In this document: positions 7,291 to 56,758 of the stretch, one piece after another
How positions within the stretch are numbered: position 1 is the stretch's first letter
Layout of the letters: each line of letters begins with the position of its first letter
Made by a program: the position numbers and the translations under genes
Notes under the pieces: model-generated
What the model saw: only the letters and a program-made list of their open reading frames with translations
Databases searched by the model: none
Told to the model about the DNA's origin: nothing
Assembly: GCA_026770705.1 (NCBI GenBank)
Contig: JANJGN010000021.1
Span: forward strand, 105,028,001-105,092,000
Direction: 5' to 3'
Origin: Isurus oxyrinchus
Taxonomy: Eukaryota
DNA length: 64,000 nucleotides

Positions 7291-7902
7291 AGAGAATACA
7301 AGAGCAGTGAGGTTATGCTGGAACTATATAGGCATCAGTTAGGCCACAGCTTGAGCACTGTGTGCAGTTCTGGTCACCTCGTTACAGAAAGGTTGTGATT
7401 GCATCAGAGAGGAGGCAGAAGAGACTTACGGGGGTGTTGCTAGGACTGGAAAATTATAGCTACGAGGAAAGATTGGATAGGCTGGGATTGTTCTCCCTTG
7501 AACAGAGGCTGAAGGGAGATTTGATTGAGATGTACAAAAATGTAAGGGTCCTGGATAGAGTAGATGGGAAGGGCGTATGTACCTTAGCAGAGAGGTCAGT
7601 GATTGGGTGGCATGAATTTAAAGTGCTTGGTAGAAGGATTAGAGGGGAGATGAGGAAAATCTTTTTCACCAGATGTTTGTGGTGGTCTGGAACTCATTCT
7701 CTGAAAAGATAGTAGAAGCAGAAACCCTCAAGCCATTCAACATGTATCCGGATATGCACCTGAAGTGTTGTAACTTGCAGGGCTACGGACCAAATGCAGG
7801 AAAGTGGGATTAGCTGGGTGGCTCGCTTTATACTGGCGCAGACACTACGGGCCAAGTGGCCTCTTTCTGCGCTGTAAACTTTCTATTATTCTATGATTCT
7901 AT
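7291..7902 (+). mobile_element. CR1 LINE 3' fragment
   Basis: ORF 7362..7712 QFWSPRY...SYEERLDRLGLFSLE; ends in attct/atg-type short repeats. Confidence 0.88.
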
Positions 7903-15723: not shown

Positions 15724-15834
15724 GCCCCCTTAATGAAACCAAGAGCGGCATAACACCGGTTTTGCTGGCGGCGCTGGCGCTGATAATTGTGTTCATCGTA
15801 TTTCTGACAGTTCGAGTGATGCAGAGAAAAGGAG
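15724..15834 (+). CDS. Gene A transmembrane exon (GPLNETKSGITPVLLAALALIIVFIVFLTVRVMQRKG)
   Basis: Acceptor ctgtttatcgtag|, donor GAG|GTTTGT, 111 nt, phase 1-1. About 20 uncharged hydrophobic residues followed by basic stop-transfer residues. Confidence 0.8.
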
Positions 15835-18930: not shown

Positions 18931-19164
18931 TGATTTCGAGTCCAAGAAGGAGTTGAAATATAAGCTGGTTTAAGGTGTGTGTGTGTGTGTGTGGGGGGGG
19001 GGTGGGGGGGGGGGGGGGGGGGGGGCGGAGAGAGAGAGAGAGACAGAGGTGCTTGTGTAGACAAACAAGCAGTGATAGAAGCAGATCATCAAAAGATGTC
19101 AGTGACAATGGTACAAAAGAACACATAGGTGTTAAAGTTAAAGTTGGTGATATTATCTAAACGA

Positions 19165-31099: not shown

Positions 31100-31910
31100 G
31101 AACACACGAATATATGAACAGATGAAACAGGAACAGAAGAAGACCATTCGGCTCCTCGAGCCTCCGCCATCATTCAATAAGATCATGGCTGATCTGTTTC
31201 TGTTTCGAATTCCAAATTCCCATCTACCCCATTATCTTTGATGCCTTTGCCAAACAATGATCCATCTACCTCTGCATTAAAAACATTCAGCGAGCCCGCC
31301 ACCACCGTCTTCGGAGGGAGAGAGTTCCAAACTCGCACAACCCTCTGAGAGAATAAAATTCTCCTCATTTCTGCCCTACAAGGACCACCCCTAATTTTGA
31401 AACAGTGCCCCCTAGTCCTGGACTTACCCGTAAGGGGAAACATCCTTTCCATGTCTACCTTTTAAATACCGTTCAGGATCTTATATACTCCAAGCAAGTC
31501 ACCCCTTACTCTTCTAAACCCCAATGGAAACCAGCCCGGTCTGTCTAAGCTTTCCTCGTAAGACAACCCTGGATATATATATCCAGGCGTTAATCCAGTA
31601 AATTTCCTCTGAATCGCTTTCAACACATTTACAACCTTCCCTAAAAAAGGAGACCAAATCTGCACACAGTATTCAAGGTGCTGTCTCATCAATGCCCTGT
31701 ATGACTGAAGCATAGCATCCTTACTTTTATGCTCAATTCCTCTTGTAACAAAGGATGTCATTCTACTGGCCTTCTTGATTACTTGCTGTATATGCATAAT
31801 AAGTTTTTGTGACTCATGCAGTAGGACTCCTGAATCTCTCTGCAGCTCGAAATCCTGCAGCCGTTCTCCGTTTAATTAACAATCTATTTTTTCTTAATTC
31901 TCCCTGCCAA
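31100..31910 (-). mobile_element. CR1 LINE 3' fragment
   Basis: Minus ORFs 31462..31797 and 31183..31452 (LEYCVQIWSP...FSQRVVRVWNSLP). Confidence 0.9.
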
Positions 31911-36008: not shown

Positions 36009-36167
36009 NNNNNNNNNNNNNNNNNNNNNNNNNNNNNNNNNNNNNNNNNNNNNNNNNNNNNNNNNNNNNNNNNNNNNNNNNNNNNNNNNNNNNNNNNNNN
36101 NNNNNNNNNNNNNNNNNNNNNNNNNNNNNNNNNNNNNNNNNNNNNNNNNNNNNNNNNNNNNNNNNNN
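36009..36167. other. Assembly gap (159 N)
   Basis: Run of N. Confidence 1.
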
Positions 36168-37034: not shown

Positions 37035-37500
37035 CGAATATAGGAATTAGTAGTAGGAGTAGGCCATTCGGCTCCCCGAGCCTGCTCCGCCATTCAATAG
37101 GATCATGGATACTCTGACTGCACCCTCAACTCCGACTTCCTGTCCACCCTCATAGCCTTTTACCCCTTTGCCAATCAAGAATCTATCTAACTCTGTCTTA
37201 ACAATATTCAATGACCCAGGCTCCACCGCTCTCTGACAAAGAAAGTTCCACAGGCTTACGACCCTCTGAGAGGAAAACACTCTTCTTCTCCGCCTTAGCT
37301 GAAAGACCCCTTATTTTTAAATGGTGTCCCGTAGCTCTAGTTGCTCCCACAAGGGGAAATATCCTGTCAGCATCCACCCTGTCAGGGCCCCTAAGGATTT
37401 TATATGTTTCAGGAAGATCGCCTCTCATTCTTCTAAGCCCCAATGGATATAGGCCCATCCCGTCCGACCTTTCGTCAAAAGATAACCGCCTTTTTTCAGG
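37035..37500 (-). mobile_element. CR1 LINE 3' fragment
   Basis: Minus ORFs RRMRGDLPETYKIL...SQRVVSLWN and a CR1 tail. Confidence 0.88.
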
Positions 37501-38329
37501 AATTGGTCGACACTGGCAGACTCTCAGAAGCATGTCTTTTAGTCAGGATCCGTTAGTATGTTTCGTTTAACAGATCTGGGATCAGAGTAGCTTACATTTA
37601 TGTGACCATGGCCTGGGATGTCTCAGCATTCAGTCTGGTCCACCAGAGGTTTCAGGGCATTAGGTAGAGCAAGGAGGTTTGCTATTTCCCACAAAGAGAC
37701 ACCTAAATGGCAACTAAACACTTCTCCGTGTAAAGCACAAGTTTTAGGAAACACTGAGGGAAACAAGAGAAACAAATGCATTCTGAATAGAGACTTTAAT
37801 ATCCACAAGCCAGAATGGTTAGTTGGTCATGCCAGTCACTCAGCTAAGCCAGTCTTGAAGGACACAGCTACTAGATTGATCACCCTCCTCCCTGTACTTT
37901 TCTCTTTCAATGAAATGGACAATTAGGCGGCTTCAAGGAGGATATAGTTCAGGCAAAATCTGAACTCATTTACAAGGAAGGAATGGGGTTGGATCAACCA
38001 AAGCTGGTTGATAGTCTGGTGACTATAGAAAATGAAGTTAAAATTAAACAGAATAACGGAATTTATAAGATATGTTAGATTTCTAATTAATAGAGAATCA
38101 AACAGAGTACACAAGTTGCGGAGTTAGATTAATAAAATGTAATAAAGACAAAGAGTGTACATGAAACTAGATGGGGGGGGGGGGTGGTATTAAAATAAGA
38201 GGGAATGCTTAATGTTTCAGAAAGGTACAGGAAGTAAAATGATCTTGAAAGGAAGCATTGAGTCAACTGAGGAGCAATAAGGTCTACTTGTGCAGGCGAA
38301 GGGCTTGGTTGAATGACTGCTTTGCACAT

Positions 38330-40507: not shown

Positions 40508-40568
40508 ATGGTGGCAGAACAGTGCGCAACAACCGTTCTTTTCCTTCTGATTTCAATTTGTACAACGG
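40508..40568 (+). CDS. Gene B exon 1: signal peptide (MVAEQCATTVLFLLISICTT+g)
   Basis: Kozak-like acaATGg, hydrophobic core, phase-1 donor G|GTAAGT. Confidence 0.85.
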
Positions 40569-43530
40569 GTAAGTCACGCTCTGATTGTTTAAATACTACA
40601 AGGAAGTTAATCAGACTAAGTGGACAGTGGAAACAGTGGAATGCATTTCTGAAATACTGGAGAAGCATACCTTAATAAGTTCCTATATTGTCTAGAACGA
40701 AGGCAGAAATACCATACCAGTTCCAGCATTAGTTGTGGTATGTTTTTAACTAAAGACAAGCACCAACTTGTGTTTAGCATCATGATTATTTTTTTAACTT
40801 AAGTTTTGCAAAGCATTACCAGCGATGGTACACAAACCCAGGCATCTGGTGGTAACAGTTCAAATGAACATTGGGCTCGTAGTAAGCTAATATTTTTCAC
40901 GCGGTGCCATTGTATATCTTAATATATTTGAAATGTTGGCATGTATCAAATGATTAAACCACATTTCACTGATCTGATTTCCTGCTTGTTCGCTAAAGAC
41001 ATGCCTTACTAACGTGGAACCAAAAAAAAACACAATTGCCAGCAAGTTTGTTAACGGGTCTGTGGTCGCTGCAAATAATATATCCAACATAGTAACTGCC
41101 GAGTCATTTAGCCCACTAACCCACAATATTCTCTCGGCGCATTTCTGTTATTCCTGAATCCTAATTGTTGCCAAGGTCTTTCTAGCTCCACTACCTTTGC
41201 CAGTGAAATGTTACACCGTTATTACCACCCATAATAAATAAGACCTTCCCGCATTCCCTATTTTTTCTGCTGTATTTAAGCTGTAAATATCCTAAAGCCC
41301 TGTAACCGACAAACTAACTGACTCTATTTTGCCAAATTCTTTTATAATTTTATATCATTCTACAATATACCCTTTTAGATATTCTTGTTAATAAAGCCGC
41401 AAGGTTATCTATATTTCCTCACAAGCCATTCCCTTAAATTCAGGAATTAAGTGCAGCTCTTTTCTGTACCTCTTCCGAAGACTGGATACCCTGTTTGAAA
41501 TAGTGACACACGCAAGACTCAAGCTATAGTCTCGCCAGGGCCAGATATAGTTTTAAAATCTAGAATTACTCGTGGAATTCCTCGTGAAATGCAGCCAAAT
41601 TGATGCATACTTTACATAAAGGATTGCTGTAAATTTTTTCATTCATCAGAAGTTACACCTTCTAACAATCATTTGCTCTAGCATTTGTGTTTAGCTTCAA
41701 GATACTTTTAAATGGAAGATTTACAAAGCGCTGCCAGTGATATTACCGAGTTTTATCTAATTTCAGTCGTCTGTTGGTAACAGTTCAATTCAACTTTGGA
41801 CACTAATGAGTTGGCATTTTTGGAATTAATACATGGTGTCATTGCAGATCTATAGCAATGTTGTTGCAAAACCAGCCAGTACAATCACAGAATTGTTTAA
41901 TCCGAAAATATATGCAGCCAAATGTACACAGTTGGGAATAATAGCCATAATGCTTTGTTGCTTTTCGTGCAGTCAGAAATCTTACAGAAACAAATTTCGG
42001 GTAGCGATCAGAGTAATATGTTTTGCTTGTTAATTGAATACATGCTGTTCATAATATTTGCTTAATAAATCTACAAATTTATAATTTTCACACTCTTTCC
42101 AACCCTGTAGACATTAACATCAGCAAATTACTCTAGGGAATTTAGGGGAACACTACAAATGAAGCTTTCTTATGTGTGAATACATTAAAATGATTTTTTA
42201 TATGCCACATCCGATATATTTATAGATAGCTGCTGTTTTCTTTGAGGTGAGCAGCCGAAGGAAAATGCGCGACACCAAATAGGGTTAGGGCCCAAGATTA
42301 TAATATTTAAATCTAGGAAGTAAATGAAATTCAATTATTTCTGGGAATGGTGTGCAAAGGGCGTCCTTGATGGAAGTCCAACTCAGTGCTTTTGTGTAAT
42401 TTATATGTATGTACGTACGTATGTATATATATATATGTATATATATATATATGATTCGTTCAACCTTAAATGAAAACATACGTTTTATGTTTACAAGAGC
42501 AAGAGGCATGCGACTCCAATATATGAAGAACGTTTCAAATAGGCTCACAAATTAATCTTAACGGCCATATTTTCCTCCATTACTTTATTTTCTGATATTT
42601 GCTTGACACATGAAATTCGATAATTGTGTTCCATCAGATCACTGCAAATACTTGTGTCAATGTTTTAATTTCCCCGAATTTAAGTTATGGGCAGCTTTCA
42701 ATGATTTATTGTACATCTTATAGCTTATCCTCGCATTACCACAACATCACAACATATTAATAGCGAACGCCAGCATCTCAGTCCATGCTGGCGCTGTGCA
42801 TTAAAGAAACGCATTTTTAAAATAATTCCCTCACTATGAAATCAGGCATCCGTAGATATTATATAAGGGTAAAAATGTATTGAATTTATTTATTGCTCCA
42901 TAATGTCAATGAGGCAATAAAGGATTCGGTACTGTCTTTTTTATTTTCTCTTTTCATCCTTTTCTCTTTCTATTTTACATTCTCTCTTTCCTTCTCTAAC
43001 ACTTTATTTTCTGCCCTTTTTATCATTTATATAAGAACTTATTTTGGAATTAATGAAAGCATACTGTGGAATTAAAACAAAGTGTAGCTCGAGGCTGCAT
43101 GATAAAACAATGAACTTGCATTCAGAATTGCATCTTTTGCAACTCAAAGGCTTCTCAAGCTGTTTCTAGGTCAGTGAATGACTGAATCCAGTCTTTGTTG
43201 TTCGATATGCCAATGTGCCAAATCTTTTGGCCATAGCGTTTGATAAATAGCTCACAGGTTTTTCCTTGCTTTTTCTGTACACTGTATTTTCGCTACTGCA
43301 CCCATTGCACTTTTTGTACTTTAGGAACAAATAACATTCTCTTATTTACTGTATTAAAGCCATCTTTGAATAATGCCTTGAAATGCATGCTTAGAACCTA
43401 CAGCTGTTTGGGTCATAGACGGCAGTGCCACAAATAAATCAAGACAGTACTGGCACACGGTACATAATGCACAATACTTTACCCAGTCACAATGGCTAAT
43501 TAATGCTTGTGTTTCTTTGTGCACCACTAG

Positions 43531-43857
43531 ATATAGAGGCTGCGACTCCTTCCATAGTGCAATCTCCTGCTTCAGTTCATATATTTGAAGGTGGCAGTGT
43601 GACTTTGAATTGCACCTTTCGCTTAACAGGGTTGGGAACCTACAGCTGGAGAAGGGATGACAGTCCCATGGACTTGCAATCTGCGAGATATAAGGAAAGA
43701 ATTATGAAAGCGGACCATGACGCTTTCAGTTCGAGGAAGGATGCATCCATTCAAATTAAGAATATGACACAATGCGAATCTGGTACTTATTACTGTGAGA
43801 TTGAAATAATGGGGAAACAGAAGCTTACAGGCAGTGGAACTTTGGTTACCGTACAGC
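43531..43857 (+). CDS. Gene B exon 2: germline-joined VJ-type Ig V domain (NKp30/NCR3-like)
   Basis: Acceptor ccactag|, donor C|GTAAGG, 327 nt, phase 1-1. Motifs VQSP, VTLNC, YSW, ASIQI, ESGTYYC and the J-like TGSGTLVTV all lie in one exon. Confidence 0.93.
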
Positions 43858-44176
43858 GTAAGGAACCCTGAACATTGCCATGCTATTTCGCAATTTGAAA
43901 TTTTCCATCATCCTTTTCTTCATGCTTTTGTTATTCTGCTTCTTTGCAGCTCTCCCTCTGTCGCTGCTTTTTTCTTCCTTCTCACTCTCTCTGCCCATGG
44001 GTGTTTCTATTTCAGTCTCTCCCCATGTCCAGCTTGTCCGTATGTCTTTGCCTTTCTCCCTATGTTCCTGCCTACCTATCCATTTCTAGCCATGTCCCTT
44101 TATATCGCTTCTTTCTTTGCTGCTGCTCTTTCTACGGATTTAAGAAGAAATAACTTATTTTTCTTTCTTTCTACAG

Positions 44177-44311
44177 ATGCTTGTAACAAACAAGGCTCTT
44201 TAAAAAAACATCCATTTGATTGGATGTGGGTTGCAGTGGCAGGGGGAGTCACGTTGCTGGTTACTCTGGCACTGCTGGTGGTGATAATAGTTCTTGCTCG
44301 ACGAAACAAAG
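44177..44311 (+). CDS. Gene B exon 3: stalk + transmembrane ((H)ACNKQGSLKKHPFDWMWVAVAGGVTLLVTLALLVVIIVLARRNK)
   Basis: Long pyrimidine tract with ctacag|, donor AAAG|GTATTT, 135 nt, phase 1-1. Confidence 0.92.
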
Positions 44312-44529
44312 GTATTTTAAATATTTACAATGGTAGCCATGCCATGAAATAATCATTGCTTCTATCTCATGCCTCACAATACCAAAATATCATTACAATA
44401 CAATATATATTTTAGTAAATTCGAAGCGAATGCTAAATATGTGTTACATTTTGCAATGATACAGATTTTCTTTTACATTTGGGGCGTGTGAACAGTTTTG
44501 GCCTCCATATTAGAAAAAAAGGCATATTG

Positions 44530-45200
44530 CTACGTCTTCTTACCATGTCCACGGACAGTCTATACATGGCCCAGCTAGAACTGGACATATTTTTGCAACT
44601 TGTTGTTGAATTCGGCAAGATCTGCAACAGTGCAGGGTTCCTCCAGCGATAGGCATTGCAGGAGATGTTGGATGGTCTGTGGCTCAGTTCCACATTCACA
44701 AGTTGTGGGGCTGGTTGTACATCCCCATTTGCTTAGTGACACATTTGAACGACCTACACCAGTCCTAAGTCTGTTAAGGCACTTCCAGGTTGCCCAGTCG
44801 CAATTAGCTCCTGGGGGAAGGCTTTCATACGGTAGAATTTCCATCGCTGGGGGTTATTCGAGACTGGCAAGCTGGTCTTTCCACAAGGCGATGCGGGCTT
44901 CAGATGGGGTTGATTGTAATAGGCCAACCCTGTTCATGAAGCTCTTCCTTGACTTTAGGTGGCTGGGTGTAGGTGAATGGCCTCTCATCTGATGTTTGAC
45001 AGAGTCGCTCTTTCTTGCTGGCTGCCATTCTTCTTATATGAGGGGGAGCGATACCCACCAGGATATATAGGCTGTTGATGTTTGTTGGTTTTAAACAACC
45101 TGTGACGGCATCCATCTTCTTAGCATGAGTAGATCTTTCCCATGCAGGGCAGGCGTATTCGGCAGTGGAATACGAATGCCACTGCAGAATGTTCAAGAAA
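44530..45200 (-). mobile_element. Vingi/Ingi-like non-LTR retrotransposon 3' fragment in gene B intron 3
   Basis: Minus ORFs YSTAEYACPAW...VTGCLKPT...GIAPPHIRR and WKCLNRLRTGVGR...KWG...CECG..QTIQHLLQC (C-terminal CCHC knuckle), then a very short 3' UTR. Confidence 0.8.
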
Positions 45201-45577
45201 AAGATTTCCTAGGGATGATGCCAGGACCTAGAAGTTATTTCATTACACTTCATGAGTGCTGTGCCCAAAGGCTCATTTTCTGCTGATTCTTCATCCTGAG
45301 TCGTTTTCTTGGTAGTTTTTCTTTGTGCCAATGATGGTTTGCCATTGCCTTCAACTCCCAGGGTTAGGATGAAGAGGCAGGTCCCAAGTCTACCTCAGCC
45401 GGAAGTGCAAACAAATCCCCTTTGTTGGTGCCATCCTGGAACATACTATCTAGCCACCTGAGCTAACCAGTCCCCCTTAGAAATTATATTTCTTAGGAAA
45501 GATTGAAGAGGCCGGGGCTGTTTTCTGTAGTGAACAAAATACTTAAGGGCTACCACGATTTTAATATTATAGAGATA

Positions 45578-45790
45578 CGATGGCGTAGTGGTAATATCAT
45601 TGGACAAGTGATCCAAAGGCCCACACTAATGCTCTAGATCCAAATCTCACCATGCCAGCGGGTGGAATTTATATTCAATTAATATATCCAGTGAATAAAT
45701 AAAGCTAGTCTCAACAATTATGATCATGAAACTATCACCGATTGTAATATTGAGCCATTAGTATAAACTGGTCACTAATTCATTAGTGAA
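45578..45790 (+). mobile_element. tRNA-derived SINE 5' fragment
   Basis: A box tggcgtagtgg; body homologous to the minus copy at 46085-46450. Confidence 0.7.
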
Positions 45791-46084
45791 TTCGTGTGAA
45801 ACCACTTTACTCAGAGAGTGGTTAAAATGTGGAGCTTGTACCACAATATGTAGTTAAACCAACTAGCATAGAGACATTTAAGGGGAAGCTAGAGAAAAAC
45901 ACAAGAGACAAGAAACAAAATACAAGAACATGTTGATCGGATTAGATGAGGAAGGGTTTGAAGAGGCTTTATGGAACATACATAACAGCATGAAACTGTT
46001 GGGTTGCATGGCTTGTTTCTGCGCTTTAACTACCATGCAATTTTCAAACTCGCATGCTTTTTTTTATAAAAAAACCCAAATATT

Positions 46085-46450
46085 ATTTCATGGGATGTGG
46101 TTGTCACTGGCAAGGACAGCATTTGTTGCCCCTTCATAATTGCCCTTAAACTGCTAGGCCATTTCAGAGGGCAGTTAAGAGTCAACCACATTGCTATGGG
46201 ACTGGAGTCACATATGTAGGCCAGACCAGGTAAGGGTGGCAGATTTCCTTCCCTAAAATATATTGGTGGGCCAGATGGGTTTTTACAACAACCATTGATA
46301 GTTTCATGGTCACCATTATTGTGCCTAGCTTTCAACTCCAGACTTATTATTAATTCAATTTAAATTCCACCAGCTGCTGAGCTGCCATGGTGGGATATGA
46401 ATGCATTAGCCTGGGCCTCTGGATTGCTAGTCCAATGACATTAGTACTAT
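46085..46450 (-). mobile_element. tRNA-derived SINE sharing its 3' tail with LINE family B
   Basis: Reverse complement ends aagggcaatt...gggcaacaaatgctg...cacatcccatgaa, the same tail as the family B LINE copies. Confidence 0.75.
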
Positions 46451-46810
46451 GCTAGTATCAATGTGCTGAGGCACCTTTTGTTTTTCAGGGAAAAATAAGA
46501 CGTAGGATAATGTGTACATTTGTCTTAATAATGTAACGTGATACCAGCAGCCTATTTACAAGGAAAATTGAGGGAAATAAAGAACATATTTTAGGGACAT
46601 TAGACATTGTGAATCGTTATGTTGATTCACTATTCATAACAATAACGGCATTTAAAATAAGCCCACTTCAGCAGAGATGCATGAACATTTAGTGGATTTT
46701 CATAATTTTAAGAGATTGTATTGTATTCAATAAGTTATATTGATATTTTAATCGTCCATATCAATGACAGTATTAACCACAATTATGTTTAATCATTTTC
46801 TTATTTACAG

Positions 46811-46829
46811 CTTACGCTTTACTTGTCAG
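46811..46829 (+). CDS. Gene B exon 4: 19-nt micro-exon ((A)YALLV)
   Basis: ttttcttatttacag| ... CAG|GTAAGT, phase 1-2. Confidence 0.78.
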
Positions 46830-46949
46830 GTAAGTCAATCAATACTTTCTTGCCGATTTGTAATGATGTAAAGATTTATTCCAAAGGTTTGCACACGATT
46901 AAAAATTACCGTCAGGTACACATTTGCTAAATATCTTCTTATCCTGCAG

Positions 46950-46984
46950 GGAATGTTCTTCTTTCGATTCCGCAAAAGAACTGG
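46950..46984 (+). CDS. Gene B exon 5 ((R)ECSSFDSAKEL)
   Basis: cttcttatcctgcag| ... G|GTAAGT, phase 2-1, in frame with exon 4. Confidence 0.78.
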
Positions 46985-49650
46985 GTAAGTGATCGCTATT
47001 TTTATTGGCCTACTCAAGGAATTGTCCGCTGCTTATATTAAGATGAAGAAGTTGGATGTGTTTTTGTATCTGTGTTGTGTGTATGAGTGTGTGCATGTGC
47101 ACTGCTTCAAATCAACGGTTTCCAATACCCCTGGGTTAGAAAGCACAATGGTAAATAGAACGTAAAAATACCCTGTTGTTTGAAATGTAATCGTTTATCA
47201 TTAAGCCTGGCTTATGTTAACCTATACTAATTTACGAATTGTCATTAGTAAGAAATGCATTCAGGTACCAGAGGCTTCTCCTTATCCAGAGCAGCAAAGA
47301 ACAACTACTGCCGTCCCTTCAACCTGAAAATAAACAACTTTCCAAGCAGATTAGAATTTAATCACATAGCAACCAAATTTTGGAACTTAAAAGCGATGTC
47401 CCTGAAAAGGTTCAGCAAAAACAGTTGGTTCAACATAACAGTCACTGAGTAAATTCAGTGGTGGTTCTGTGATGTTATTTCATGACTTGCAAAAGCAGCA
47501 TAATTCATACTTGGACAATTCAGTTAAACACAATCCTTCTCATTAACATCAACATTCAATGCATTTTGAAATTTCATTTCCACTCAGGCTGACTTACAAA
47601 TTTCCTCAACATTGTTGTAACAGTTTAGAGTCATGCAGGGCTATTGAGGCAAACTGTTTACCTCGTACATTTGGAAAGTGGTAAAGTGTAAGTTCCAGTC
47701 GCAATAGTTGCACTACATGCCTTTCACACAAAACATATACAAGCAAACACTTCTTAAGAAAGCACAAAGCATCCTTAAATCTTTTATTTCTTCAGGGAAA
47801 CATTCATATATTAAAATCTAGAAACACTAACTTTAACAGCAACATTCGCGCTCTCAGAATGTCTCCAGGTATCCAACACATTTCAACGTTGCTTGCTCTC
47901 AACCATTTTAAAATATGATTTCTTTGTTACGGTCTGATCAACTCTAAATTGCCATACACTAATTCGGTAGGTGAAAAGATATCAACGTAGTTTAAATAAG
48001 AGCTTGACAACAACCTGTGAACAAGAGGATACCATTCAGCTCCTTGAGCCTGTTCCACTATTCAATATGATGATGACTGATCTTCTGCCTGAACTCCATT
48101 TTCCCCTGTTGGGCTCAGCCACGGTTTTCAGAATGTGTTTTGGTCAGTGTCTTTTCTCTGAGCATATGCAGACTTTATAATTGTTTTCCTTGTATATTAG
48201 TATGAATACCTTGTTTATGATATGGAGTTCTTCTGGTTTAGCGTTTGAAGCTGAAATTAACCGACCGGTTTCTGATCCACGTAACAAATTCTAAACACTG
48301 TGGCTGCCCACTACTGGGGAAAAGGTGGTTCAGGGAAAAGATTGGCCACGATTGTATTGAATGGTGGAACATGCTGAAGGAACCGAATGATCTACTCCTG
48401 CTCAAATGTATTATATTCTTATGCTCTTTTTAAACCATGTTGATACCCCTGTACGTACCGCATAAGTAGATGGCAATATTGAGTTGCTCAGACCATAACA
48501 AGGGATTCATGCTTCCCGTAGACAAAGCTGAGTGGGACAGGATCACTCGCGCCACACAGCGTGGATCGAGCGAAGGAGGGAGGCACATCTTTGTGAAGTG
48601 CAAGCTGGTGTCTCCGCGGAGATCCATCCATTGCCACAGGCCGGACCCTCCATTGGGCACATGATGCTTAGAAGGAATTACCCCTATACAACGTGGCAGC
48701 AGACCTGACCACCTGGATTCACATGGCATTTACCCAGATGGCCTGGCTCCTGCCTGCTACTGGTTGAATCCTAATGGCAGCGGAGCGAGGCCCTTAAGTG
48801 ATCATATCAGGGCCTCCTTTGGTTTCTAGATGGTATGGGGCCTCCATCTTGTACATTCCAGCTCCATTATGCTCCGCCTCGCCTCCTAGTCCACCTCCGC
48901 GTGAGCACTAAATTTCTGCCACTTTTTTTGCTGATGCATTACAGCGTGAGAAGTGCAATTGTGCACAAGACCCCCAACAATGAGACAGTCCTTACAAAAG
49001 ACTGGATATTTGCTGATTCTCTATCATGTACCATTGCTCCACTTAAGGCTGTCTCAGCTGTCAGGTTTCAACAATGTGACGGCAAAACAAGTAAACAGAC
49101 ACAAATCACGCACTTATTTTTGCGTTTCATCAGCAATTAAGGAGTAAAGCCAGCTAAATTGCACCCTGACACATTCAGCAATAAAGCATCCTAGATACAT
49201 TCTAGCTACCGTAAACACACCTAAGAGATTTTTGAAGCAGAAAGGGAACAAAAATCGCACGCATATGAGATTAAATCAAATCTAAATCTCACAAATCTAT
49301 GTATTTTTGTATCTTACAACTTCAAAAGCGTTTGATTGATTATAAGGCCTCTCTAGATGTTCAGAAGTTGGGCAAGATTTTCCTTCCTTCTTTAAAGTTT
49401 ATTTTAAAAGACGAGCAGGTAAATTGGGCATCTCGAAGCATGCATGCACATCGCCCGTTAATAGGCAGGCCAATTCGATTAGCAGCATGCGACATAACTG
49501 GGAAACGTACCTGCTGGAATCTTGGTCAATAAACGCACACGAGAGTACCTGCTGAGAATGAAAATATTTGCTCCTCCAGAGTATCAGATACAATTGAAAG
49601 GAGCTTCCTTAAACCATTCATTAACTTTCTTCTTCTTTTGTCCTAAACAG

Positions 49651-49694
49651 AATTGCCACAGAGAAACAAAGTGCGAAATCATGCCGAACATGAG
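49651..49694 (+). CDS. Gene B exon 6 ((E)LPQRNKVRNHAEHE)
   Basis: Long pyrimidine tract with aaacag| ... GAG|GTAAAC, phase 1-0. Confidence 0.7.
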
Positions 49695-49727
49695 GTAAAC
49701 GCGTGTCCGTCTATTTGGCTGCATGTA

Positions 49728-50596
49728 TTGTCACGTATGAAGTATGACATAACTTCATAGGCTCATTTGTGTGCAGCAGTATTGATTACTTCAAAAAGCG
49801 TATCAAAGGCGCACCAAGTGAAACAATTGGAATAACGGCACATAAATATCTCAGCAACACACCATCAAAGGGAAATGCAAAAACTCAAAGGGGGTTAGAA
49901 CATAAAAGAGTTTGGGTGGCTCACCTCTCTTCCAAAACTTTCAGCAGTGCTGGCCTTTAATCTGAATTTCTACATTTCTATGATCTCTCAACCTTCACGA
50001 GAGCGCGGCACTTTCATAGGAAGGGGGCAACTTGATCCGGTGATATCTAACCGGTTTTACACCTCGCCCGGTTTTCTTTTCAATTTAAAACAATAATCCT
50101 AACATTTCACCATTTTGAGTTATGAATTCATAGCCGTTGATAAATATGGGGATTACTTAAAATCAGCGGGCGCCGTGCCTGCTACCTACCCGCCCGCCCC
50201 TGCCACCGTGGCAATTACTCGTTAGAGGAGGAACATTGGGGCGCCTCACCTGCACTACTGAGGCACTTAAATGACCAATAGCCTCATCTTACCGCTGCTG
50301 CTATTATGCCCACGATGCTGGACAACCCACGCCAGTCTGGAAACCCGGAAGCTTTAGCAAATTAAAGGCCGCCACTGCTGAAAGTTTTGGAAGAAAGGTG
50401 AGCCACCCAATCTCTTTTCTGTTTTAACCCCCTTTGAGTTTCTTGCATTTCCCTTTGATGGTGTGTTGTTGGGATACTTATGTGCCGTTATTCCAATAGC
50501 TTCACTTGGTGCGCCTTTGATACACTTTTTGAAGTAATCAATACTACTGCACACAAATGAGGCTGTGAAGTTGTATCACGCTTTCATACGTGACAA
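49728..50596. repeat. Inverted repeat with arms 49728-49964 and 50358-50596 and a spacer of about 390 bp
   Basis: The arms are near-identical reverse complements, also visible as twin ORFs 49769..49960(+) and 50354..50554(-). Confidence 0.95.
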
Positions 50597-51499
50597 GGGA
50601 TGGTGTGCGGCTCACACATGCCGATGGACCACGAGTATACATTCAGGGGCAAATTAAAATTGAAAGCCACCCTTCCCCAAATATATATTTGGCACCTTGT
50701 AACGGGAAACCCCGTTAGAATAAAACATGCTTTGCAAAGTGTCCAGGGACCTAATTGGAGCTCTTGCCTCCCAAGCTAGCGGGGCTTCATCTATAATGTC
50801 TACAAAACAAGGGGCTGAATTTTTCGCTCCCAGAACGGGAGCGTTTCCCGCTTTGCGAACGCAATGTGAAGCGGGATGACGTCGGACGCCGCTTAGGAAG
50901 TCATCACGCCGGTTTCGGATAATACGGCACGCGGGCGGGTCAAAAAGTCGGGAACCGGCCTGGCAATTTAAATATCAGTTTAAAAGGCAATTCAGTTAAC
51001 TAACTACCCATCTCATTGCAATAATCCGGCCTTCAGGGCGAGATTTAGGACAAGTGGGAAATCCGTTTTTTTTTAAGAGTAAGCTTGTTTGGCCCGGTTC
51101 CAAAATTGCAGTTCAAACTCTTTTTACTGCAGGAAACGCTCAGTTGAGTGGGCCGAGGAGCCTATTATATATTTTCCATGAGGAGAACTCTCCTCTGACT
51201 CAGGGGAAGGGGGTGGGGGGCCATTCTGATAGCTTGTCCATTGCCCTGGATGAGGGGTGAAAGGTGTCTGAGACAATTGGGGTTTGTTGCCTCAGTTGGA
51301 GGCACAACCACCAGTGAGGAGAAAAGGATTACGAGGAGGAGGAAGAGGGTGAGAGGAGGAAGGGAACAGAGGGAACCTAAGGAGGCAGTGGTTTTTTAGG
51401 TAGGGGACCGAGCAACACCGGACCCCCAGTATCAGGCGGAACACCGAAGTCCTCAGCGGAGGCGCAGATAAACGTATGCCGCCCCAATGGTATAGAGTC

Positions 51500-51720
51500 A
51501 GAGATCTAGCTAACTTCAACTGATCTCATAAGGTAATTGAGTCTTTTGTGACACTGGAACCAAGTTTTCCTCATCACATTAACCCTGCTGACCTCGTCGG
51601 GTACCTCTCCCACGCACTGCAAGTCCGCCTGCGCTTCCTCCTCAAAACAGCGCTCGGCATGAACTGCTGATGTCTAAAGCTGCACGCAGGAGGGCGCCAA
51701 GGGCGGCCTCACCGAATCTG
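51500..51720 (-). pseudogene. Harbinger Myb/SANT-like (second ORF) relic
   Basis: Minus strand reads AWE/..DEVSRVNVMRKTWFQCHKRLNYLMR, matching the W..(I/V)A..V.....RT..QC.K...L trihelix pattern. Confidence 0.65.
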
Positions 51721-51882
51721 GGGCAACTTTGCCCCATCCCTCACTCCAATGACACAAAAGACTATATATATATGTAATAAATGTGCAACCCCTCAATTCC
51801 AAAAATTGAGAGACTCGCTGATTTATAAAATTTCTGCCACCTACGAAGTTTGACATGATTGGCCGAGATTAGCTAAAATTTC

Positions 51883-52430
51883 AAATAAAAACAGAGATTG
51901 CTGTGAAATGCTCAGCAGACCTGGCGACAGCTGCGGACAGAGAAAGAGAGTTAACGTTTCGAATCCGTAGGATTCTTCTTCAGAGCCGAAGATAGGCAGA
52001 AATGTGATGGGTTTTATACTGTTCATGAGAGGGGGCAGAGCAGGTGGAGCAAAATAGAACGTCAAGGATAGGTGGGAGCTCAGGAAGGATTTGACAAAGA
52101 TGTCATGGATACAACACAAAGGAAGTGGTAATCATAGTGGTAAAAATTAAGGCAGATGCTAAACGCTGCATCAAGAGCATTTAGCAGAATGTGTTAATAG
52201 TAGAATAAGGGTCAGCGTCCTCTGAAAGCAAAGCATCAGAAGAAGTTACAGACTAGCCTACCGTGGGAAAAATATCAGCATGAGGGCAGAGTTCATGGTC
52301 TGATTTGTTGGACTCATTGTTGAGTGCAGGAGCCTATAAATTGCCATATAGAAAGACGGGGTGATGTCCCACTAGTTTGCTTTGGGGAACTGGAGAACAG
52401 CACCTCGTCTTCCGATTATTCAGCCTTGTA
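51883..52430 (-). mobile_element. Older Penelope 3' end (pLTR + end of ORF) with a hammerhead motif at 51949-51987
   Basis: Homologous to 20730-21340. The minus strand reads ctgaaga-a-gaatc-ctacg-gattc-gaaacgtt. Confidence 0.75.
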
Positions 52431-52595
52431 TACGGATTTGACTAAGAGGTGTAAATGCTGTGTTATCGTAGCCCTGTGATATAATCTAGCATTACGTCAA
52501 TATGATTTTTTTCTGGTTGTTGTTGCTTCAGTTTGAAGCCATTTTCCTTACTTTATGATTTCCCTAAGGCTTTCGTCTTACGTGATCATGAAAAT

Positions 52596-53600
52596 ATCGG
52601 TGCTAGGACTCCAGTTATTCACAATATATATTAATGATTTAGATGAGGGAACTAAATGTAATATCTCCAAATTTGCAGACGATACAAAGCTGGGTGGGAG
52701 AGTGAGCTGTGAGGAGGATGCAGAGATGCTTCAGTGTGATTTGGGCAAGCTGAGTGAGTGGGAAAATGCATGGGAGATGCAGTATAATGTGGATAAATGT
52801 GAGGTTATCCACTTTGGTAGCAGAAACAGGAAGGCAAATTATTATCTGAATGGCTATAAATTGAGAAAGGGGAATGTGCAATGAGACTTGGGTGTCATCG
52901 TACAGCAGTTGCTGAAGGTATGCATGCAGGTGCAGCAGGCGGTAAAGAAGGCAAATGATACGTTGGCCTTAATAACGAGACGATTCGAATACAGGAGCAG
53001 GGCTGTCTTGCTGCAATTATACAGGGCCTTGTTATGGCCACATCTGGAATCTTGTGTGCAGTTTTGGTCTCCTTATCTGAGGAAGGATGTTCTTGCTATA
53101 GAGGGAGTGCAACGAAGATTTAACAGATTGATTCTTGGGATGACGGATCTGACATATGAGGAGAGATTTGGTCAGTTCAGATTATATTCTCTGGAGTTTA
53201 GAAGAATGGGGGTGTATCTCATAGAAATCTATAAAATTCTAACAGGACTAGACAGGGTATATGCAAGACAGATGCTCCCGATGGTGGGGGAGTACAGAAC
53301 CAGGGGTCACAGTCTGAGGTTATGGGGTAGACCATTTAGGACTGAGATTAGTAGAAATTTCTTCATGCAGGTAGTGGTGAGCCTATGGACTCGCTACTAC
53401 AGAAAGTGGTTGAGGCCAAAACATTTTATGTTTTCAAGAAAGAGTTAGATATAGCTCTTGAGGCTAAAGAGATCAAATGATATATGGTGAAAGCAGGAGC
53501 AGGCTATTGAGTTGGATGCTCAGCCATGATCAAGATGAATGGTGGAGCAGGCTGGAAGGGCCGAATGGCCTACTCCTGCTCTTACTTTCTATGTTCTCTT
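52596..53600 (+). mobile_element. CR1 LINE 3' fragment (about 1 kb)
   Basis: LFTIYINDLDEG...KFADDTKLGG, LQLYRAL..PHLESCVQFWSP and a CR1 tail. Confidence 0.92.
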
Positions 53601-53724
53601 TTTCTTTCTCTTTAACTCGATATCAAATCCTCTGCCTGCTATTTGCGCCTTTGTTGTGTAAGCAACACAGAATATAAATACTGCCCTCAAGCCTGCTAAT
53701 TCTTTGAAGAATTGTTAAAATTCA

Positions 53725-53990
53725 GAAAAAAGGAACATGCTATGGGAGCTCCTCATCTTGCACTCATCAGGACAGCTACACAAGATAAACCAACAGTAAA
53801 GAGGAACAATAATATATAGTGCATGAGAAGAGAGTGCTGATTGGTTGACAAATGCATACTGGTAGCCAACTAATCAGTGCTCTCTTCTCATGCAGTATAA
53901 ATTGTTGTTTCCTTTACTGTTGGTTTATCTTGCGTAACTATCCTGAATAGTGCACGATGGAAAGTTTCCATACCATGTTTCTTCTTTCAG
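53725..53990. repeat. Palindrome (arms about 53725-53847 and 53866-53988) of a hammerhead-bearing repeat
   Basis: For example caagataaaccaacagtaaag pairs with ctttactgttggtttatcttg. The left arm on the minus strand reads ctgatga-gtgcaagat-gagg. Confidence 0.85.
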
Positions 53991-54223
53991 CAAGTAGGTC
54001 TGTATTACCGAACGAGTAAGTGTTAAATTCAACAATGGCTTTATAAGAGCTTTTTTCTTTCGCACACCACAATTTCAGTTGCATACAAGTTGAGACTGGT
54101 CCTGAATGGAAAATGTGGAAATGTTATAACACAAATGCTTGTTGCATAAAATTGAGTGGGTGAAAAAATGCCCTGTTTACTGTAATGCCAACTAACAAAG
54201 TGTTCATGTCCTTTCTGCAAAAG

Positions 54224-54260
54224 CATGAAGTTGCTTACTCTCACTGTCGTGATAAGGAAG
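54224..54260 (+). CDS. Gene B exon 7 (HEVAYSHCRDKE)
   Basis: Branch-point-like actaac at 54191, ctttctgcaaaag| ... AAG|GTAAGA, phase 0-1. Confidence 0.6.
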
Positions 54261-56059
54261 GTAAGACGAAGAAAAACCGCCCACCACTGCCAAAGAGGAC
54301 CATGCAGTAAACCTTCACATCGCTTGATTATTGTCGCGTATCTATTTCACCAGCAGACCTTATCAAAATAACTGTAAGATTAAAAAGAATACGACTTTCA
54401 ACTTTTCAAGTGTTTTTTGGAACTAGTTTTTGATCAATGATGTGCAATACACGTTGTGTGAAAGTTTAAATATGTGACATTGTTCCTTTTCCAACTAGAT
54501 CCTGTCTTGAATTTGCTGTTACCGTTGGGTAGCCTATTGTTAGCAATTAGTTATATAATTCGAAAAACAATGAAAAGCTGTATTCAGTTGAAATGCTTTC
54601 CAAAAGTAAACAAATACTTTTCGTGCCTAATGGCACATGAGGCAGACAACCCACACATAGCTAGGTTTACCTGGAGCAGGTCACGGGTCTATAGCCTGAA
54701 GGGAGCCAATCCTCATCAAGCATGGCTGATCAGGAGACTCTCCTGCTTTTGTACATCGGAAGGGTTTATAATGGTCAATCTGTAAGGCTAGGTTATTAAT
54801 GCACTTTCCATGGTCATCAACTCCTAGGTTCGGACTCGCACCTGGAGCTTTTGGCTCAGAGAGAGGGACGCTATTCACCGTGCCACAAGATCTCCCCAGT
54901 TATTTTATTTATTCCAGCTTTCTTAATTGCATTTTATCGATGCCCCTGTGTTCTTTGCTTCTATGAGTTTGTCTTGTTACCTTTATGTTGCAAGTGCACT
55001 TTAAGCTTTATTTTTTCTCCTTGTACCATTATGTTTTCACATACTGGTTAGTAGCCTAGCTTGTAGTTTAAAATAATTCCTCCTCAGAACCTTAGAACTG
55101 AGAGCCTTCTCGATTTTCTCATTTCACCTAAACCCCGGCCAGCCAAAGACTAAAAACCTTTTAAAAAACACTTAAGTGTGGCACCAACTAAACACTTTTA
55201 CTTGACTTCGTTCAACCACTGTGGTGTTCTGCACTGCGGGTTTTAGACCTACACTTAGGCTTCCCACAAATATGTGTATTTTGTTACATAATTGCTGCTT
55301 TAAGGTCGCATAGGAGGCATTATTCACAGACAGCCCACAGATTGGTATCCAAGGGTTTGCAATTCAGACAGTTGTTGACTGGAGAAAGCGCTCCATAGCT
55401 CAACCTTTTACAATGAAGACACCGATAATGCCACAGCAAACTCGGGAAAAGTGTTCCAGACAACACGTTGCCTCTGACTAGCAGTTGAAATCATGAAGTA
55501 TAATAGTAACAAGCAGAACTGAAAGGAATACACTTGTGACCAAATATCTCACTGTATATCCAATAGGAATTTCTAGACACTTCAGTAATACATAAACGAG
55601 GAAATAAAATCATTAGGATATGTAATATAATGTATGTTATTAAGGCGGATATTCAGGTATTTACTGAAAAAATGTCAGATTTTTATATTATTTTCCTGTT
55701 ATTTTAAAAATATTTCCCCTTTTAGACATTACTTGTATCATTTTCTAGAATTTTGTTTCTCCATTTAGGCGCATGTTTTTCTGGAGATCAAATGTTTGAT
55801 TACTAATCTGTACTACTTTATAAGTAAACCTCGTATTTTGCAATGAACATGTGCACGATTAGAGATATGCGACTGAAATGCAAGCTTAATTATATGAAGC
55901 AATTACACAGTGGCACATTATGTGCCATTCTAGCTCTTCTCAATAAAAGCGCATTTCAGGCCAAGTATCTGTTGGTTTTCTATTTCTGGTCATTAGATTT
56001 GTTGCTGTACAGTTAAATAATTTTAGTGTCAGTATCAAAAATAGTATATTTTTCTGCAG

Positions 56060-56118
56060 AGCGTCTCATCCACGGAACACCGTCTCAGAGAATTTCACAA
56101 GACTGGGTGGAGCAAAAA
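56060..56118 (+). CDS. Gene B exon 8 ((E)RLIHGTPSQRISQDWVEQK)
   Basis: tttttctgcag| ... AAA|GTAAGC, phase 1-0, continuing the frame from exon 7. Confidence 0.6.
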
Positions 56119-56752
56119 GTAAGCGCTTAGAATTAAGGAGCAGGGCTGGAGGGAAGGTAAAATGGATCGAAAATATGTTTATTGCCTTATGCTAGGTGCT
56201 AGGGAACTCCACCACTTACAATAGAGTAGAGAGACACGTAATGCTCTTCTAAGATCAATGGTGGAGGCCAAACAATGATGTTATTCAACACAAAAAAAAA
56301 CAGAATTGAAATACTGCGAAGGGGGAATAGTAGGCTGATATAAAGGAGTACTGCAGTTTGGCTACATGACTCGTCGCATCTAAAATTACCTTTGGAAAGT
56401 ATTTGTAAGTGAAAGGTTTTAAAATGGCTTTTCATAGGAAGCAGCAAGGTGTTTGGAATTATGGAGTGAGTTTCTCAAGATCAGGACATATTCACTGAAT
56501 AAATGGCTACCCGTGGCAATGCTATACCCATCCAACATTATGGTGAACATCAAGATGCTATGTGTTGGCAATCCACAGATATTGTCACGACGCCACCGTC
56601 TCCCGGTATCCAACAGAAGATTGAAACTACACTAGAATGCATCTGCTAATTAAAGAGAGGTTTTCTTATTAGGGCCACTTTAAGCTTGAAAAGTGCACGA
56701 TCAAAAGATAAATCGTTTACTTTTATTACACTAAACACTTGTATTCTTTCAG

Positions 56753-56758
56753 AAATAA
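56753..56758 (+). CDS. Gene B candidate terminal exon (K, stop)
   Basis: Acceptor ttgtattctttcag| then AAA TAA, with AATAAA near 56992 and 57117. An alternative acceptor at 56840 would give PVMENIT*. Confidence 0.35.
   Translation, partial: K

What the first reader, a model, noticed from the sequence alone, without database searches (positions are those of the whole stretch)
40508..56758. Non-rearranging VJ-type single-Ig receptor: NKp30-like ectodomain on an uncharged TM with a tyrosine-bearing tail
Seen: eight exons splice in frame with canonical GT-AG sites (717 nt, 239 codons). The V domain carries its J-like GxGTxVxV in the same exon, and no RSS is nearby. Known: human NKp30 ends CRVEVLGLGVGTGNGTRLVV (here CEIEIMGKQKLTGSGTLVTV) and signals through a TM arginine. 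Inference: this protein has no charged TM residue and a roughly 70-aa tail with AYALLV and VAYSHC, so it may be an autonomously signalling, possibly inhibitory, relative of the NKp30/CD28/PD-1-type group. Such genes bear on the origin of antigen receptors.
Basis: partly seen in the sequence, partly recalled or inferred. Interest (0 to 1): 0.8.

Follow-up and report, generated by a model that had tools for sequence, protein, structure and literature searches.

The report
Conserved shark NKp30-family receptor gene
This is a real, transcribed shark gene for a small antibody-like surface receptor of the known NKp30 (NCR3) family; the same gene is already annotated in many sharks and rays, so it is not new, although its tail is unusually conserved and carries no standard signalling motif.

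Summary
The gene is real. Spliced contigs from two related species join the V exon to the TM exon exactly at the predicted GT-AG sites, and their depth also covers the two micro-exons that follow. By colinearity with the great white shark protein (235 aa), the gene has 7 coding exons (708 nt, 235 codons plus stop) and ends at a TAA at 54308-54310. It does not end at 56758.

It is one of the shark NCR3 (NKp30) family. Its nurse-shark counterpart is deposited as NCR3, and similar-length counterparts are annotated in at least 13 sharks and rays. The full architecture is seen only in automatic annotations, and the 2021 paper could not be read.

V and J lie in one exon, no RSS splits them, the TM has no charged residue, and the tail is 65 aa. 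None of 12 counterparts has an ITIM, ITSM or ITAM. The most conserved part is a 22-residue segment next to the membrane (89% identical between sharks and rays, against 46% for the V domain).

Earlier notes of this scan record many NCR3-family genes elsewhere in this genome. The window's exons were searched one by one and never joined.

The parts
40508..40568 (+). Coding exon 1: start codon and signal peptide (MVAEQCATTVLFLLISICTT, then a split codon); donor gt
   Evidence: It is 90% identical to residues 1-20 of P0004. The X1 contig carries 136 nt upstream of exon 2, and the exon 2 piece starts one letter early at 43530, as expected if exon 1 ends in G.
43531..43857 (+). Coding exon 2: V-set Ig domain, phase 1-1. 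It has two N-glycosylation sequons (NCT, NMT), YYC, and a germline-joined J-like GSGTLVTV.
   Evidence: Pfam V-set E 6e-14. It is 95.4% identical to P0004 residues 22-129. Spliced contigs of X1, X3 and X7 cover it.
44177..44311 (+). Coding exon 3: stalk with a conserved Cys (HACNK), an uncharged TM (WMWVAVAGGVTLLVTLALLVVIIVLA), and the stop-transfer RRNK
   Evidence: The junction 43857|44177 is exact in X1 record 1 and X3 record 9. No D, E, K, R or H occurs in the TM columns of 12 orthologues.
46811..46829 (+). Coding exon 4: a 19-nt micro-exon that encodes (A)YALLV of the invariant segment next to the membrane
   Evidence: ag/gt borders. It is identical in P0004 and P0002. Depth arithmetic in bin 46800-46999 for X1, X3 and X6 fits it.
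46950..46984 (+). Coding exon 5: 35 nt, (R)ECSSFDSAKEL
   Evidence: The same depth arithmetic applies.
49651..49694 (+). Coding exon 6: 44 nt, (E)LPQRNKVRNHAEHE
   Evidence: It is 100% identical to P0004 residues 194-207, with ag/gt borders. It was not covered by read laying.
54224..54310 (+). Coding exon 7 (terminal): HEVAYSHCRDKEGKTKKNRPPLPKRTMQ, then TAA at 54308-54310
   Evidence: It is 100% identical to P0004 residues 208-235. The acceptor ag lies at 54222-23. All homologues end here.
54311..54407 (+). Probable short 3' UTR with ATTAAA at 54379-54384 (inferred)
   Evidence: ATTAAA was found. The X3 contig has 284 nt beyond 44309. That equals the remaining CDS (187 nt) plus 97 nt, so the contig would end about 23 nt after the ATTAAA. 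This is an inference from lengths only.

Best explanation
Window 40508-54310 (+ strand) holds the lamniform-shark orthologue of one conserved lineage of the shark NCR3 (NKp30) gene family. It has seven coding exons and encodes a 235-aa type I membrane glycoprotein. In order, the protein has a signal peptide, one non-rearranging VJ-type V domain, a short fast-evolving stalk with a conserved cysteine, an uncharged TM helix and a 65-aa cytoplasmic tail.

Shown:
- The gene is intact, spliced and transcribed.
- It has counterparts of 233-240 aa in sharks and rays.
- It has no TM charge and no ITIM, ITSM or ITAM.
- Its most conserved part is the segment RRNKAYALLVRECSSFDSAKE next to the membrane.

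Inferred:
- It cannot recruit CD3zeta-, FcRgamma- or DAP12-type adaptors through a TM charge.
- It most likely acts as a disulfide-linked dimer. It binds a cell-surface ligand through the V domain.
- It then signals or is trafficked through the invariant helical segment next to the membrane. That segment holds a YALL (YxxPhi) motif and a cysteine that may be acylated. A distal His/Cys/Tyr patch (AY-x-HC) and a basic, proline-rich C-terminus may also take part.
- Whether the output is activating, inhibitory or endocytic is not determined.
For: Gene model:
- GT-AG borders and frame hold for all exons.
- All seven exon peptides are colinear with great white P0004 over residues 1-235. Exons 4, 6 and 7 are 100% identical, and the V exon is 95.4%.
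- Spliced contigs support the model: X1 and X3 with 0 mismatches, X6 and X7 from a sister species.
- P0016 is a complete 233-aa homologue from a 1136-nt Logan contig, which is too short to hold introns of this size.

Family:
- The whale shark NCR3-like proteins and nurse shark NCR3 QTT61900.1 fall in one 90% cluster. They are about 70% identical to the window's V exon and 73% to the TM exon.
- Human NKp30 takes Foldseek ranks 1-3 and 5.
- The full-length single-V hits of the library-wide profile search that I looked up are named NCR3 or NCR3-like. The newt member matches human NKp30 at E 4e-16, against 4e-6 for CTLA-4.

Tail:
- Shark-versus-ray identity is 89% in the segment next to the membrane, 46% in V and 23% in the stalk. 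No ITIM, ITSM or ITAM occurs in 12 orthologues, and YALL (YAAL in one) is present in all.
- The AlphaFold2 model carries the TM helix on through RRNKAYALLVREC.

Orthology:
- The V-domain tree groups rows by taxonomy, with the window next to Carcharodon and Cetorhinus.
- The fused Pristiophorus model P0018 places an ITIM-tailed neighbour directly upstream. The TM of that neighbour matches window 15726-15821.
Against: - Exons 6 and 7 are not directly shown by reads in this species.
- By sequence alone, the V profile scores human NKp30 (34.7 bits) no better than TCR Valpha (36.1) or SIRPalpha (34.8).
- Names such as 'NCR3-like' are mostly automatic. Great white carries the name 'myelin protein zero-like protein 1'.
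- Paralogues P0060 and P0077 keep the motif next to the membrane but have Cys in place of the Tyr. The conserved segment therefore need not work through phosphotyrosine.
- The second Tyr is lost in Mobula and Narcine.
- The C-terminal PxxPx[RK] motif is absent in several orthologues.
- No ligand, cell type or signalling partner is known.
Confidence: 0.75

Rival explanations
1. It is an inhibitory receptor, as the first reader leaned to. The two tail tyrosines would act as ITIM- or ITSM-like docking sites for SHP-1, SHP-2 or SHIP.
For: The TM is uncharged and the tail is long with two tyrosines. Related NCR3-family members in nurse shark, horn shark, lungfish and newt carry clear ITIMs such as VEYATI, VQYSAL, LQYAML and VLYADI.
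Against: Neither tyrosine fits [SIVL]xYxx[IVL] or TxYxx[VI] in any of 12 orthologues. Tyr1 has K at position -2. Tyr2 has C at +3 and is replaced by L in Mobula and H in Narcine. Paralogues replace Tyr1 by Cys.
Confidence: 0.12
2. It is not an NKp30 relative but an adhesion-type V-set protein of the myelin P0 / MPZL1 kind, as NCBI names the great white orthologue.
For: P0004 carries the name 'myelin protein zero-like protein 1'. MPZL1 is Foldseek rank 6, at E 1.9e-8.
Against: NKp30 holds ranks 1-3 and 5. The V domain carries a J-like GxGTxVTV. The nearest named relatives are NCR3 and NCR3-like, including two deposited nurse shark NCR3 sequences. The tail has no ITIM of the kind that defines MPZL1 (the MPZL1 ITIMs are from general knowledge).
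Confidence: 0.03
3. It is a decaying or non-functional family member: a pseudogene, or a transcript without a role.
For: It sits in a transposon-rich cluster. The upstream neighbour shows no V-exon match in this window.
Against: The 235-codon frame is intact. Splice sites are canonical. Spliced transcripts occur in two species and several studies. The tail is strongly conserved from sharks to rays.
Confidence: 0.02
4. It is a CD28/CTLA-4-type co-receptor: a disulfide-linked V homodimer that signals through tyrosine and proline motifs in its own tail.
For: The stalk cysteine is conserved in 11 of 12 orthologues, the TM is uncharged, and the tail has Tyr and, in many species, PxxPx[RK]. CTLA-4 is the second-best PDB family for the newt NCR3-like protein.
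Against: CD28 and CTLA-4 are not among the listed PDB sequence hits (best 60) or Foldseek hits (top ~50) for this lineage. No MYPPPY-like FG loop and no YxxM motif is present. The gene has 7 coding exons with micro-exons.
Confidence: 0.08

Closest known systems
Nurse shark NCR3 QTT61900.1 (shark NCR3 family, Kinlein et al. 2021, Immunogenetics 73:333; paper not readable here)
   Same: It is the likely orthologue. It has the same leader, the V domain is 68% identical to the window's V exon, the stalk Cys is the same, the TM exon is 73% identical, and RRNK follows the TM. It groups with whale shark in the V tree.
   Different: The deposited protein is 175 aa and ends RRNKGT, so it shows no tail. 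I could not check whether the paper describes the conserved tail.
Great white shark XP protein 'myelin protein zero-like protein 1' (P0004) and the whale shark, horn shark, basking shark and ray annotations
   Same: The architecture is the same throughout and the length is 233-240 aa. Exons 4, 6 and 7 are identical in great white.
   Different: There are 5 replacements in V, 4 of them within residues 46-55, and 6 in the stalk/TM exon. The names are automatic and inconsistent.
Human NKp30 (NCR3)
   Same: It has a single V domain with a germline-joined J-like GxGTxLVV in one exon and is a type I membrane protein. It is the best structural match.
   Different: Human NKp30 pairs with CD3zeta or FcRgamma through a TM arginine and has a short tail (general knowledge; reference 3 of PMC12272517). 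Here the TM has no charge, the tail is 65 aa and conserved, the stalk has a Cys, and there are 7 coding exons. Sequence similarity to human NKp30 is no higher than to TCR Valpha or SIRPalpha.
ITIM-bearing NCR3-family paralogues (nurse shark QTT61901.1, horn shark, lungfish and newt NCR3-like)
   Same: They share the V type. Nurse shark QTT61901.1 and the elasmobranch paralogues P0060 and P0077 also share the NKA motif at the end of the TM exon.
   Different: Those proteins carry canonical ITIMs. This lineage has none.

Membership tests
NCR3 / NKp30 family (vertebrate, including the shark NCR3 family) | A single V-set Ig domain with a germline-joined J-like GxGTxVxV in the same exon, with no RSS | tested here: met
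   Pfam V-set E 6e-14. GSGTLVTV lies at the end of the exon. No RSS lies at or inside the exon.
NCR3 / NKp30 family (vertebrate, including the shark NCR3 family) | The ectodomain is closer to NKp30 than to other V families | tested here: inconclusive
   Structure favours NKp30, which takes Foldseek ranks 1-3 and 5. The sequence profile is a tie with TCR Valpha and SIRPalpha. There is an indirect link through the newt NCR3-like protein, which hits NKp30 uniquely. No outgroup-rooted tree could be built.
NCR3 / NKp30 family (vertebrate, including the shark NCR3 family) | Orthology to a gene deposited or described as shark NCR3 | tested here: met
   Nurse shark QTT61900.1 shares a 90% cluster with the whale shark NCR3-like proteins. 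It is 68% identical to the window in V and 73% in the TM exon. The tree follows taxonomy.
NCR3 / NKp30 family (vertebrate, including the shark NCR3 family) | A charged (Arg) TM residue for an ITAM adaptor, as in human NKp30 | tested here: not met
   No D, E, K, R or H occurs in the TM of the window exon or of 12 orthologues.
NCR3 / NKp30 family (vertebrate, including the shark NCR3 family) | Linkage to the MHC | not testable with these tools
Earlier scan notes mention a shark MHC 4.7 Mb away, but I did not check this.
NCR3 / NKp30 family (vertebrate, including the shark NCR3 family) | Binds B7H6 | not testable with these tools
   This needs a binding assay.
ITIM/ITSM inhibitory immunoreceptors | [SIVL]xYxx[IVL] or TxYxx[VI] in the tail | tested here: not met
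   A regex scan of 12 orthologue tails gave no hit. The window's exon peptides read KAYALL and VAYSHC.
ITAM-bearing or ITAM-adaptor-coupled activating receptors | YxxL/I-x6-12-YxxL/I in the tail, or a TM charge | tested here: not met
CD28/CTLA-4 family | A stalk cysteine for a covalent dimer | tested here: met
   The Cys in HACNK/HTCDK is conserved in 11 of 12 orthologues (C132). Dimerisation itself was not tested.
CD28/CTLA-4 family | An MYPPPY-type FG loop and YxxM/PYAP tail motifs | tested here: not met
   The FG region reads EIEIMGKQKLTGSG. No YxxM motif is present.
MPZL1 (the name given to the great white orthologue) | Two ITIMs in the tail, and the closest fold is MPZ-type | tested here: not met
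   No ITIM is present. MPZL1 ranks only 6th, behind NKp30.

The most novel reading that the evidence does not exclude
This lineage may be the one slowly evolving, single-copy member of an otherwise fast-evolving NKp30 family. It would have kept a third signalling mode since before sharks and rays split. In this mode the invariant module next to the membrane (RRNKAYALLVRECSSFDSAKE) and the distal His/Cys patch (H-x-x-H-Q ... AY-x-HCH) would dock an unknown conserved cytosolic partner. One possibility is a metal-bridged clasp to a kinase, as CD4 and CD8 form with Lck. Such a mode would use neither a TM-charge adaptor nor an ITIM. If so, it would be a candidate for the ancestral wiring of VJ-type receptors.
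Probability: 0.15. Interest if true: 0.6.

Novelty: new member of a known kind. Interest (0 to 1): 0.3.

Why it matters
NKp30/NCR3 is the classic non-rearranging VJ-type gene used to reason about the origin of antigen receptors. Shark NCR3 genes are published as a diverse family. This locus adds a well-resolved orthologue with a corrected exon model.

Comparing the public annotations also shows something useful for anyone working on the family. One lineage occurs at about the same length in sharks and rays. It lacks both the activating and the inhibitory hallmarks. Its cytoplasmic segment next to the membrane is far more conserved than its ligand-binding domain. That gives a concrete, testable target for how such receptors signal. 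It does not change what is known about the origin of antigen receptors.

Tried and rejected
- A search for paralogous exons in the window found none. The only other match is the TM exon of the upstream neighbour.
- The RSS scan gave only two weak matches away from the V/J boundary.
- The sequence-only test of NKp30 affinity against the PDB gave a tie, both with the single V exon and with a 4-sequence profile.
- The Kinlein 2021 and Flajnik 2012 papers are not held. Text searches for their content found nothing usable.
I therefore have no synteny from the great white or whale shark loci and no transcript contig for this species.
- The V-only tree (108 columns) does not resolve deep nodes and has no outgroup. 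It supports only the taxonomy-like grouping.
Full-length analyses used database orthologues.
- Read laying was limited to 6000 letters. The stretch I chose (43400-49399) missed exon 6 by 252 nt.
Full report
**What is in the sequence**

On the + strand there is an ATG/leader exon at 40508-40568. A 327-nt phase 1-1 exon at 43531-43857 follows, and its translation is a V-set Ig domain (Pfam PF07686, E 6e-14). This domain has two N-glycosylation sequons, YYC, and a J-like GSGTLVTV inside the same exon. A 135-nt exon at 44177-44311 encodes a short stalk with one cysteine, a 26-residue TM segment without any charged residue, and RRNK. Two micro-exons follow, at 46811-46829 (19 nt) and 46950-46984 (35 nt). 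All have AG/GT borders and keep the frame.

**Transcription**

One search for sequencing runs found contig sets, guessed to be RNA, that hold about half of the sampled words of 43520-44320. That share matches the exonic fraction of the stretch.

- Laid on 43400-49399, the 760-nt contig of X1 and the 646-nt contig of X3 match with no mismatch. Both jump from 43857 to 44177 at adjacent contig positions, so intron 2 is removed exactly at the predicted sites (table 8).
- The contigs stop at 44309, not 44311. The exon ends in AG, and the acceptor of exon 4 is also AG, so these two letters fit in either place.
- The depth in bin 46800-46999 equals contig depth x 56/200 in X1, X3 and X6 (2.82, 1.81 and 1.90). 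That is exons 4 and 5 (19 + 35 nt) plus those two letters. The micro-exons are therefore in the same transcripts.
- Contigs from a second organism (X6, X7; different studies) carry the same junction.
- The V-exon differences listed for that organism are six: 4 replacements and 2 silent changes. The four replacements are exactly the residues of the great white shark protein. Organism B is therefore great white or very close to it.

A word search with the V-exon ORF found whale shark 'NCR3-like' proteins. A search with the TM exon found a 235-aa great white shark protein, P0004.

- P0004 continues after ...AKEL with E-LPQRNKVRNHAEHE and then HEVAYSHCRDKEGKTKKNRPPLPKRTMQ-stop.
- Both pieces are in the window, each 100% identical. 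One is a 44-nt exon at 49651-49694 (ag/gt). The other is a terminal exon that starts at 54224 (acceptor ag at 54222-23) and runs to a TAA at 54308-54310.
No homologue matches anything beyond 54310.
- The corrected model has 7 coding exons, 708 nt, and 235 codons plus stop. It is colinear with P0004 from residue 1 to 235.
- Exons 6 and 7 lay outside my single read laying stretch. In this species they rest on homology and on contig lengths. The X3 contig has 284 nt past 44309, which equals the remaining CDS plus 97 nt. It would then end about 23 nt after an ATTAAA at 54379.
- A complete 233-aa homologue comes from a 1136-nt Logan contig, too short to hold introns of this size (P0016). This points to a mature mRNA of this architecture in a ray-like species.

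**What it is**

- The whale shark proteins share a 90% cluster with a nurse shark protein deposited as 'natural cytotoxicity triggering receptor 3' (QTT61900.1, 175 aa). PMC12227049 lists MT914154-914161 as the nurse shark NCR3 genes. The family paper is Kinlein et al. 2021, whose reference I found in PMC10450919. I could not read the paper itself.
- A word search with P0004 found counterparts of 233-240 aa in Mustelus, Scyliorhinus, Heptranchias, Chiloscyllium, Heterodontus, Rhincodon, Mobula, Hemitrygon, Pristis and Rhinoraja. It also found longer gene models in Cetorhinus and Narcine.
- A V-domain tree groups them by taxonomy: window + Carcharodon + Cetorhinus, Mustelus + Scyliorhinus, Rhincodon + Ginglymostoma, and a ray clade. 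This is what orthologues should do, although deep nodes are unresolved.
- A library-wide profile search gave the orthologue representatives first and then a steep drop. The full-length single-V hits that I looked up are a second nurse shark NCR3 (QTT61901.1), a horn shark NCR3-like protein, NCR3-like proteins of lungfish, newt and sturgeon, and unnamed elasmobranch paralogues.
- The newt protein matches human NKp30 uniquely in the PDB (E 4e-16, against 4e-6 for CTLA-4).
- An AlphaFold2 model of P0004 has a confident V domain (pLDDT about 90). Its best Foldseek matches among 350,542 PDB chains are human NKp30 at ranks 1, 2, 3 and 5.
- By sequence alone the V profile does not prefer NKp30 (34.7 bits) over TCR Valpha (36.1) or SIRPalpha (34.8). 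The specific link to tetrapod NKp30 is therefore supported by structure and by intermediates. It is not proven by a rooted tree.

**The tail**

In an alignment of 12 counterparts, no TM column holds a charged residue.

| Region | Shark-versus-ray identity |
|---|---|
| V domain | 46% |
| Stalk | 23% |
| TM | 63% |
| 22 residues after the TM (RRNKAYALLVRECSSFDSAKE) | 89% |
| Exon 6 | 33% |
| Exon 7 | 50% |

- The model continues the TM helix through the conserved 22-residue segment, and the rest of the tail is predicted disordered.
- Regular-expression scans found no ITIM, ITSM, ITAM, YxxM or consistent YxN motif in any of the 12 tails. YALL (YxxPhi) is present in all, with YAAL in one.
- The second tyrosine sits in a His/Cys-rich patch (AY-x-HC). 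It is replaced by L in Mobula and H in Narcine.
- Paralogues P0060 and P0077 keep the motif next to the membrane but with Cys instead of Tyr (RNKACIALQRQ). The ITIM-bearing nurse shark paralogue keeps NKA. The segment is therefore a family trait and may not act through phosphotyrosine.
- Between the window species and great white, the V and stalk/TM exons carry 11 amino-acid replacements. Four of them lie within V residues 46-55. Of the six V-exon nucleotide differences listed, only 2 are silent. Exons 6 and 7 are identical at the protein level. The ectodomain evolves fast and the tail is constrained.

**How it probably works**

Shown: it is an expressed type I single-V receptor without a TM charge and without canonical tyrosine motifs.

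Inferred: the conserved stalk cysteine suggests a covalent dimer. With no TM charge, coupling to CD3zeta-, FcRgamma- or DAP12-type adaptors is unlikely. The constrained helix next to the membrane carries YxxPhi and a nearby cysteine, so it is the most likely functional module for docking or sorting. The direction of signalling is unknown.

**Context**

- The window holds no second gene of this kind.
- A fused gene model from Pristiophorus (P0018) joins an ITIM-tailed receptor directly to this gene's counterpart. The TM of that upstream receptor matches window 15726-15821. The neighbour relation is therefore conserved.
- Earlier notes of this scan record many NCR3-family genes 12-30 kb on either side and about 4 Mb away on the same piece, and mention a shark MHC. 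I did not test those notes.
- The introns are full of transposon fragments.

**Verdict**

The gene is real, and the V/TM/tail features were correctly spotted. The last exons were mis-modelled. The claimed novelty does not hold: this is a member of the published shark NCR3 family, with a deposited nurse-shark counterpart and many genome annotations. What is mildly new is the comparative picture of a widely shared lineage with an invariant, motif-less segment next to the membrane.

**Limits**

- The window's exons were searched one by one, and the joined model was never built or searched.

Noticed in passing
window 15726-15821 (+): A TM exon (..SGITPVLLAALALIIVFIVFLTVRVM) is 62% identical to the TM of the ITIM-tailed receptor that forms the first half of the fused Pristiophorus model P0018. 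The second half of P0018 is this gene's orthologue. The upstream neighbour is therefore a conserved NCR3-like gene. No V exon for it was found in the window.
   Followed up: partly
window 46000-46450 (intron 3): A short interspersed repeat has enormous summed contig depth in all four runs (8,000-57,000, against about 10 for the gene), with many internal joints. It is a highly expressed or high-copy SINE-like element.
   Followed up: no
window 19129-20817 (+): A 562-aa ORF has a reverse-transcriptase YIDD motif and a C-terminal GIY-YIG-like LYIGET...EH block. It looks like a near-intact Penelope-type element.
   Followed up: no
window 52555-53448 (+), intron 6; also 7362-7712, 31462-31797 (-), 37198-37533 (-): ORFs with the C-terminal part of a LINE reverse transcriptase recur in the window. 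They are repeated fragments of one LINE family.
   Followed up: no
window 43668-43697 (V exon, residues 46-55): Four of the five V-domain replacements between this species and great white (M46I, L48F, A51P, E55K) fall within ten residues, in the C'-C'' (CDR2-like) region. This may be a hot spot of ligand-driven change, but the numbers are small.
   Followed up: partly
P0017 (Heptranchias isoform X2), P0003 (nurse shark), P0001 (whale shark X2), P0005 (Cetorhinus): Annotated or deposited variants exist. One lacks most of the V domain. One is a tail-less form that ends RRNKGT. One has an alternative short tail after ..KEL. One reads through the exon 6 donor. They may be real isoforms or model artefacts.
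   Followed up: no
window 43217 (-) and 47144 (+): Two weak RSS-like heptamer-spacer-nonamer matches occur, each with 1 + 2 mismatches, against 0.3 expected in shuffles. Neither adjoins the V/J boundary, so they are probably chance.
   Followed up: yes
window 1957-2147 and 36009-36167: Two runs of N (191 and 159 letters) lie outside the gene. They were left untouched.
   Followed up: no
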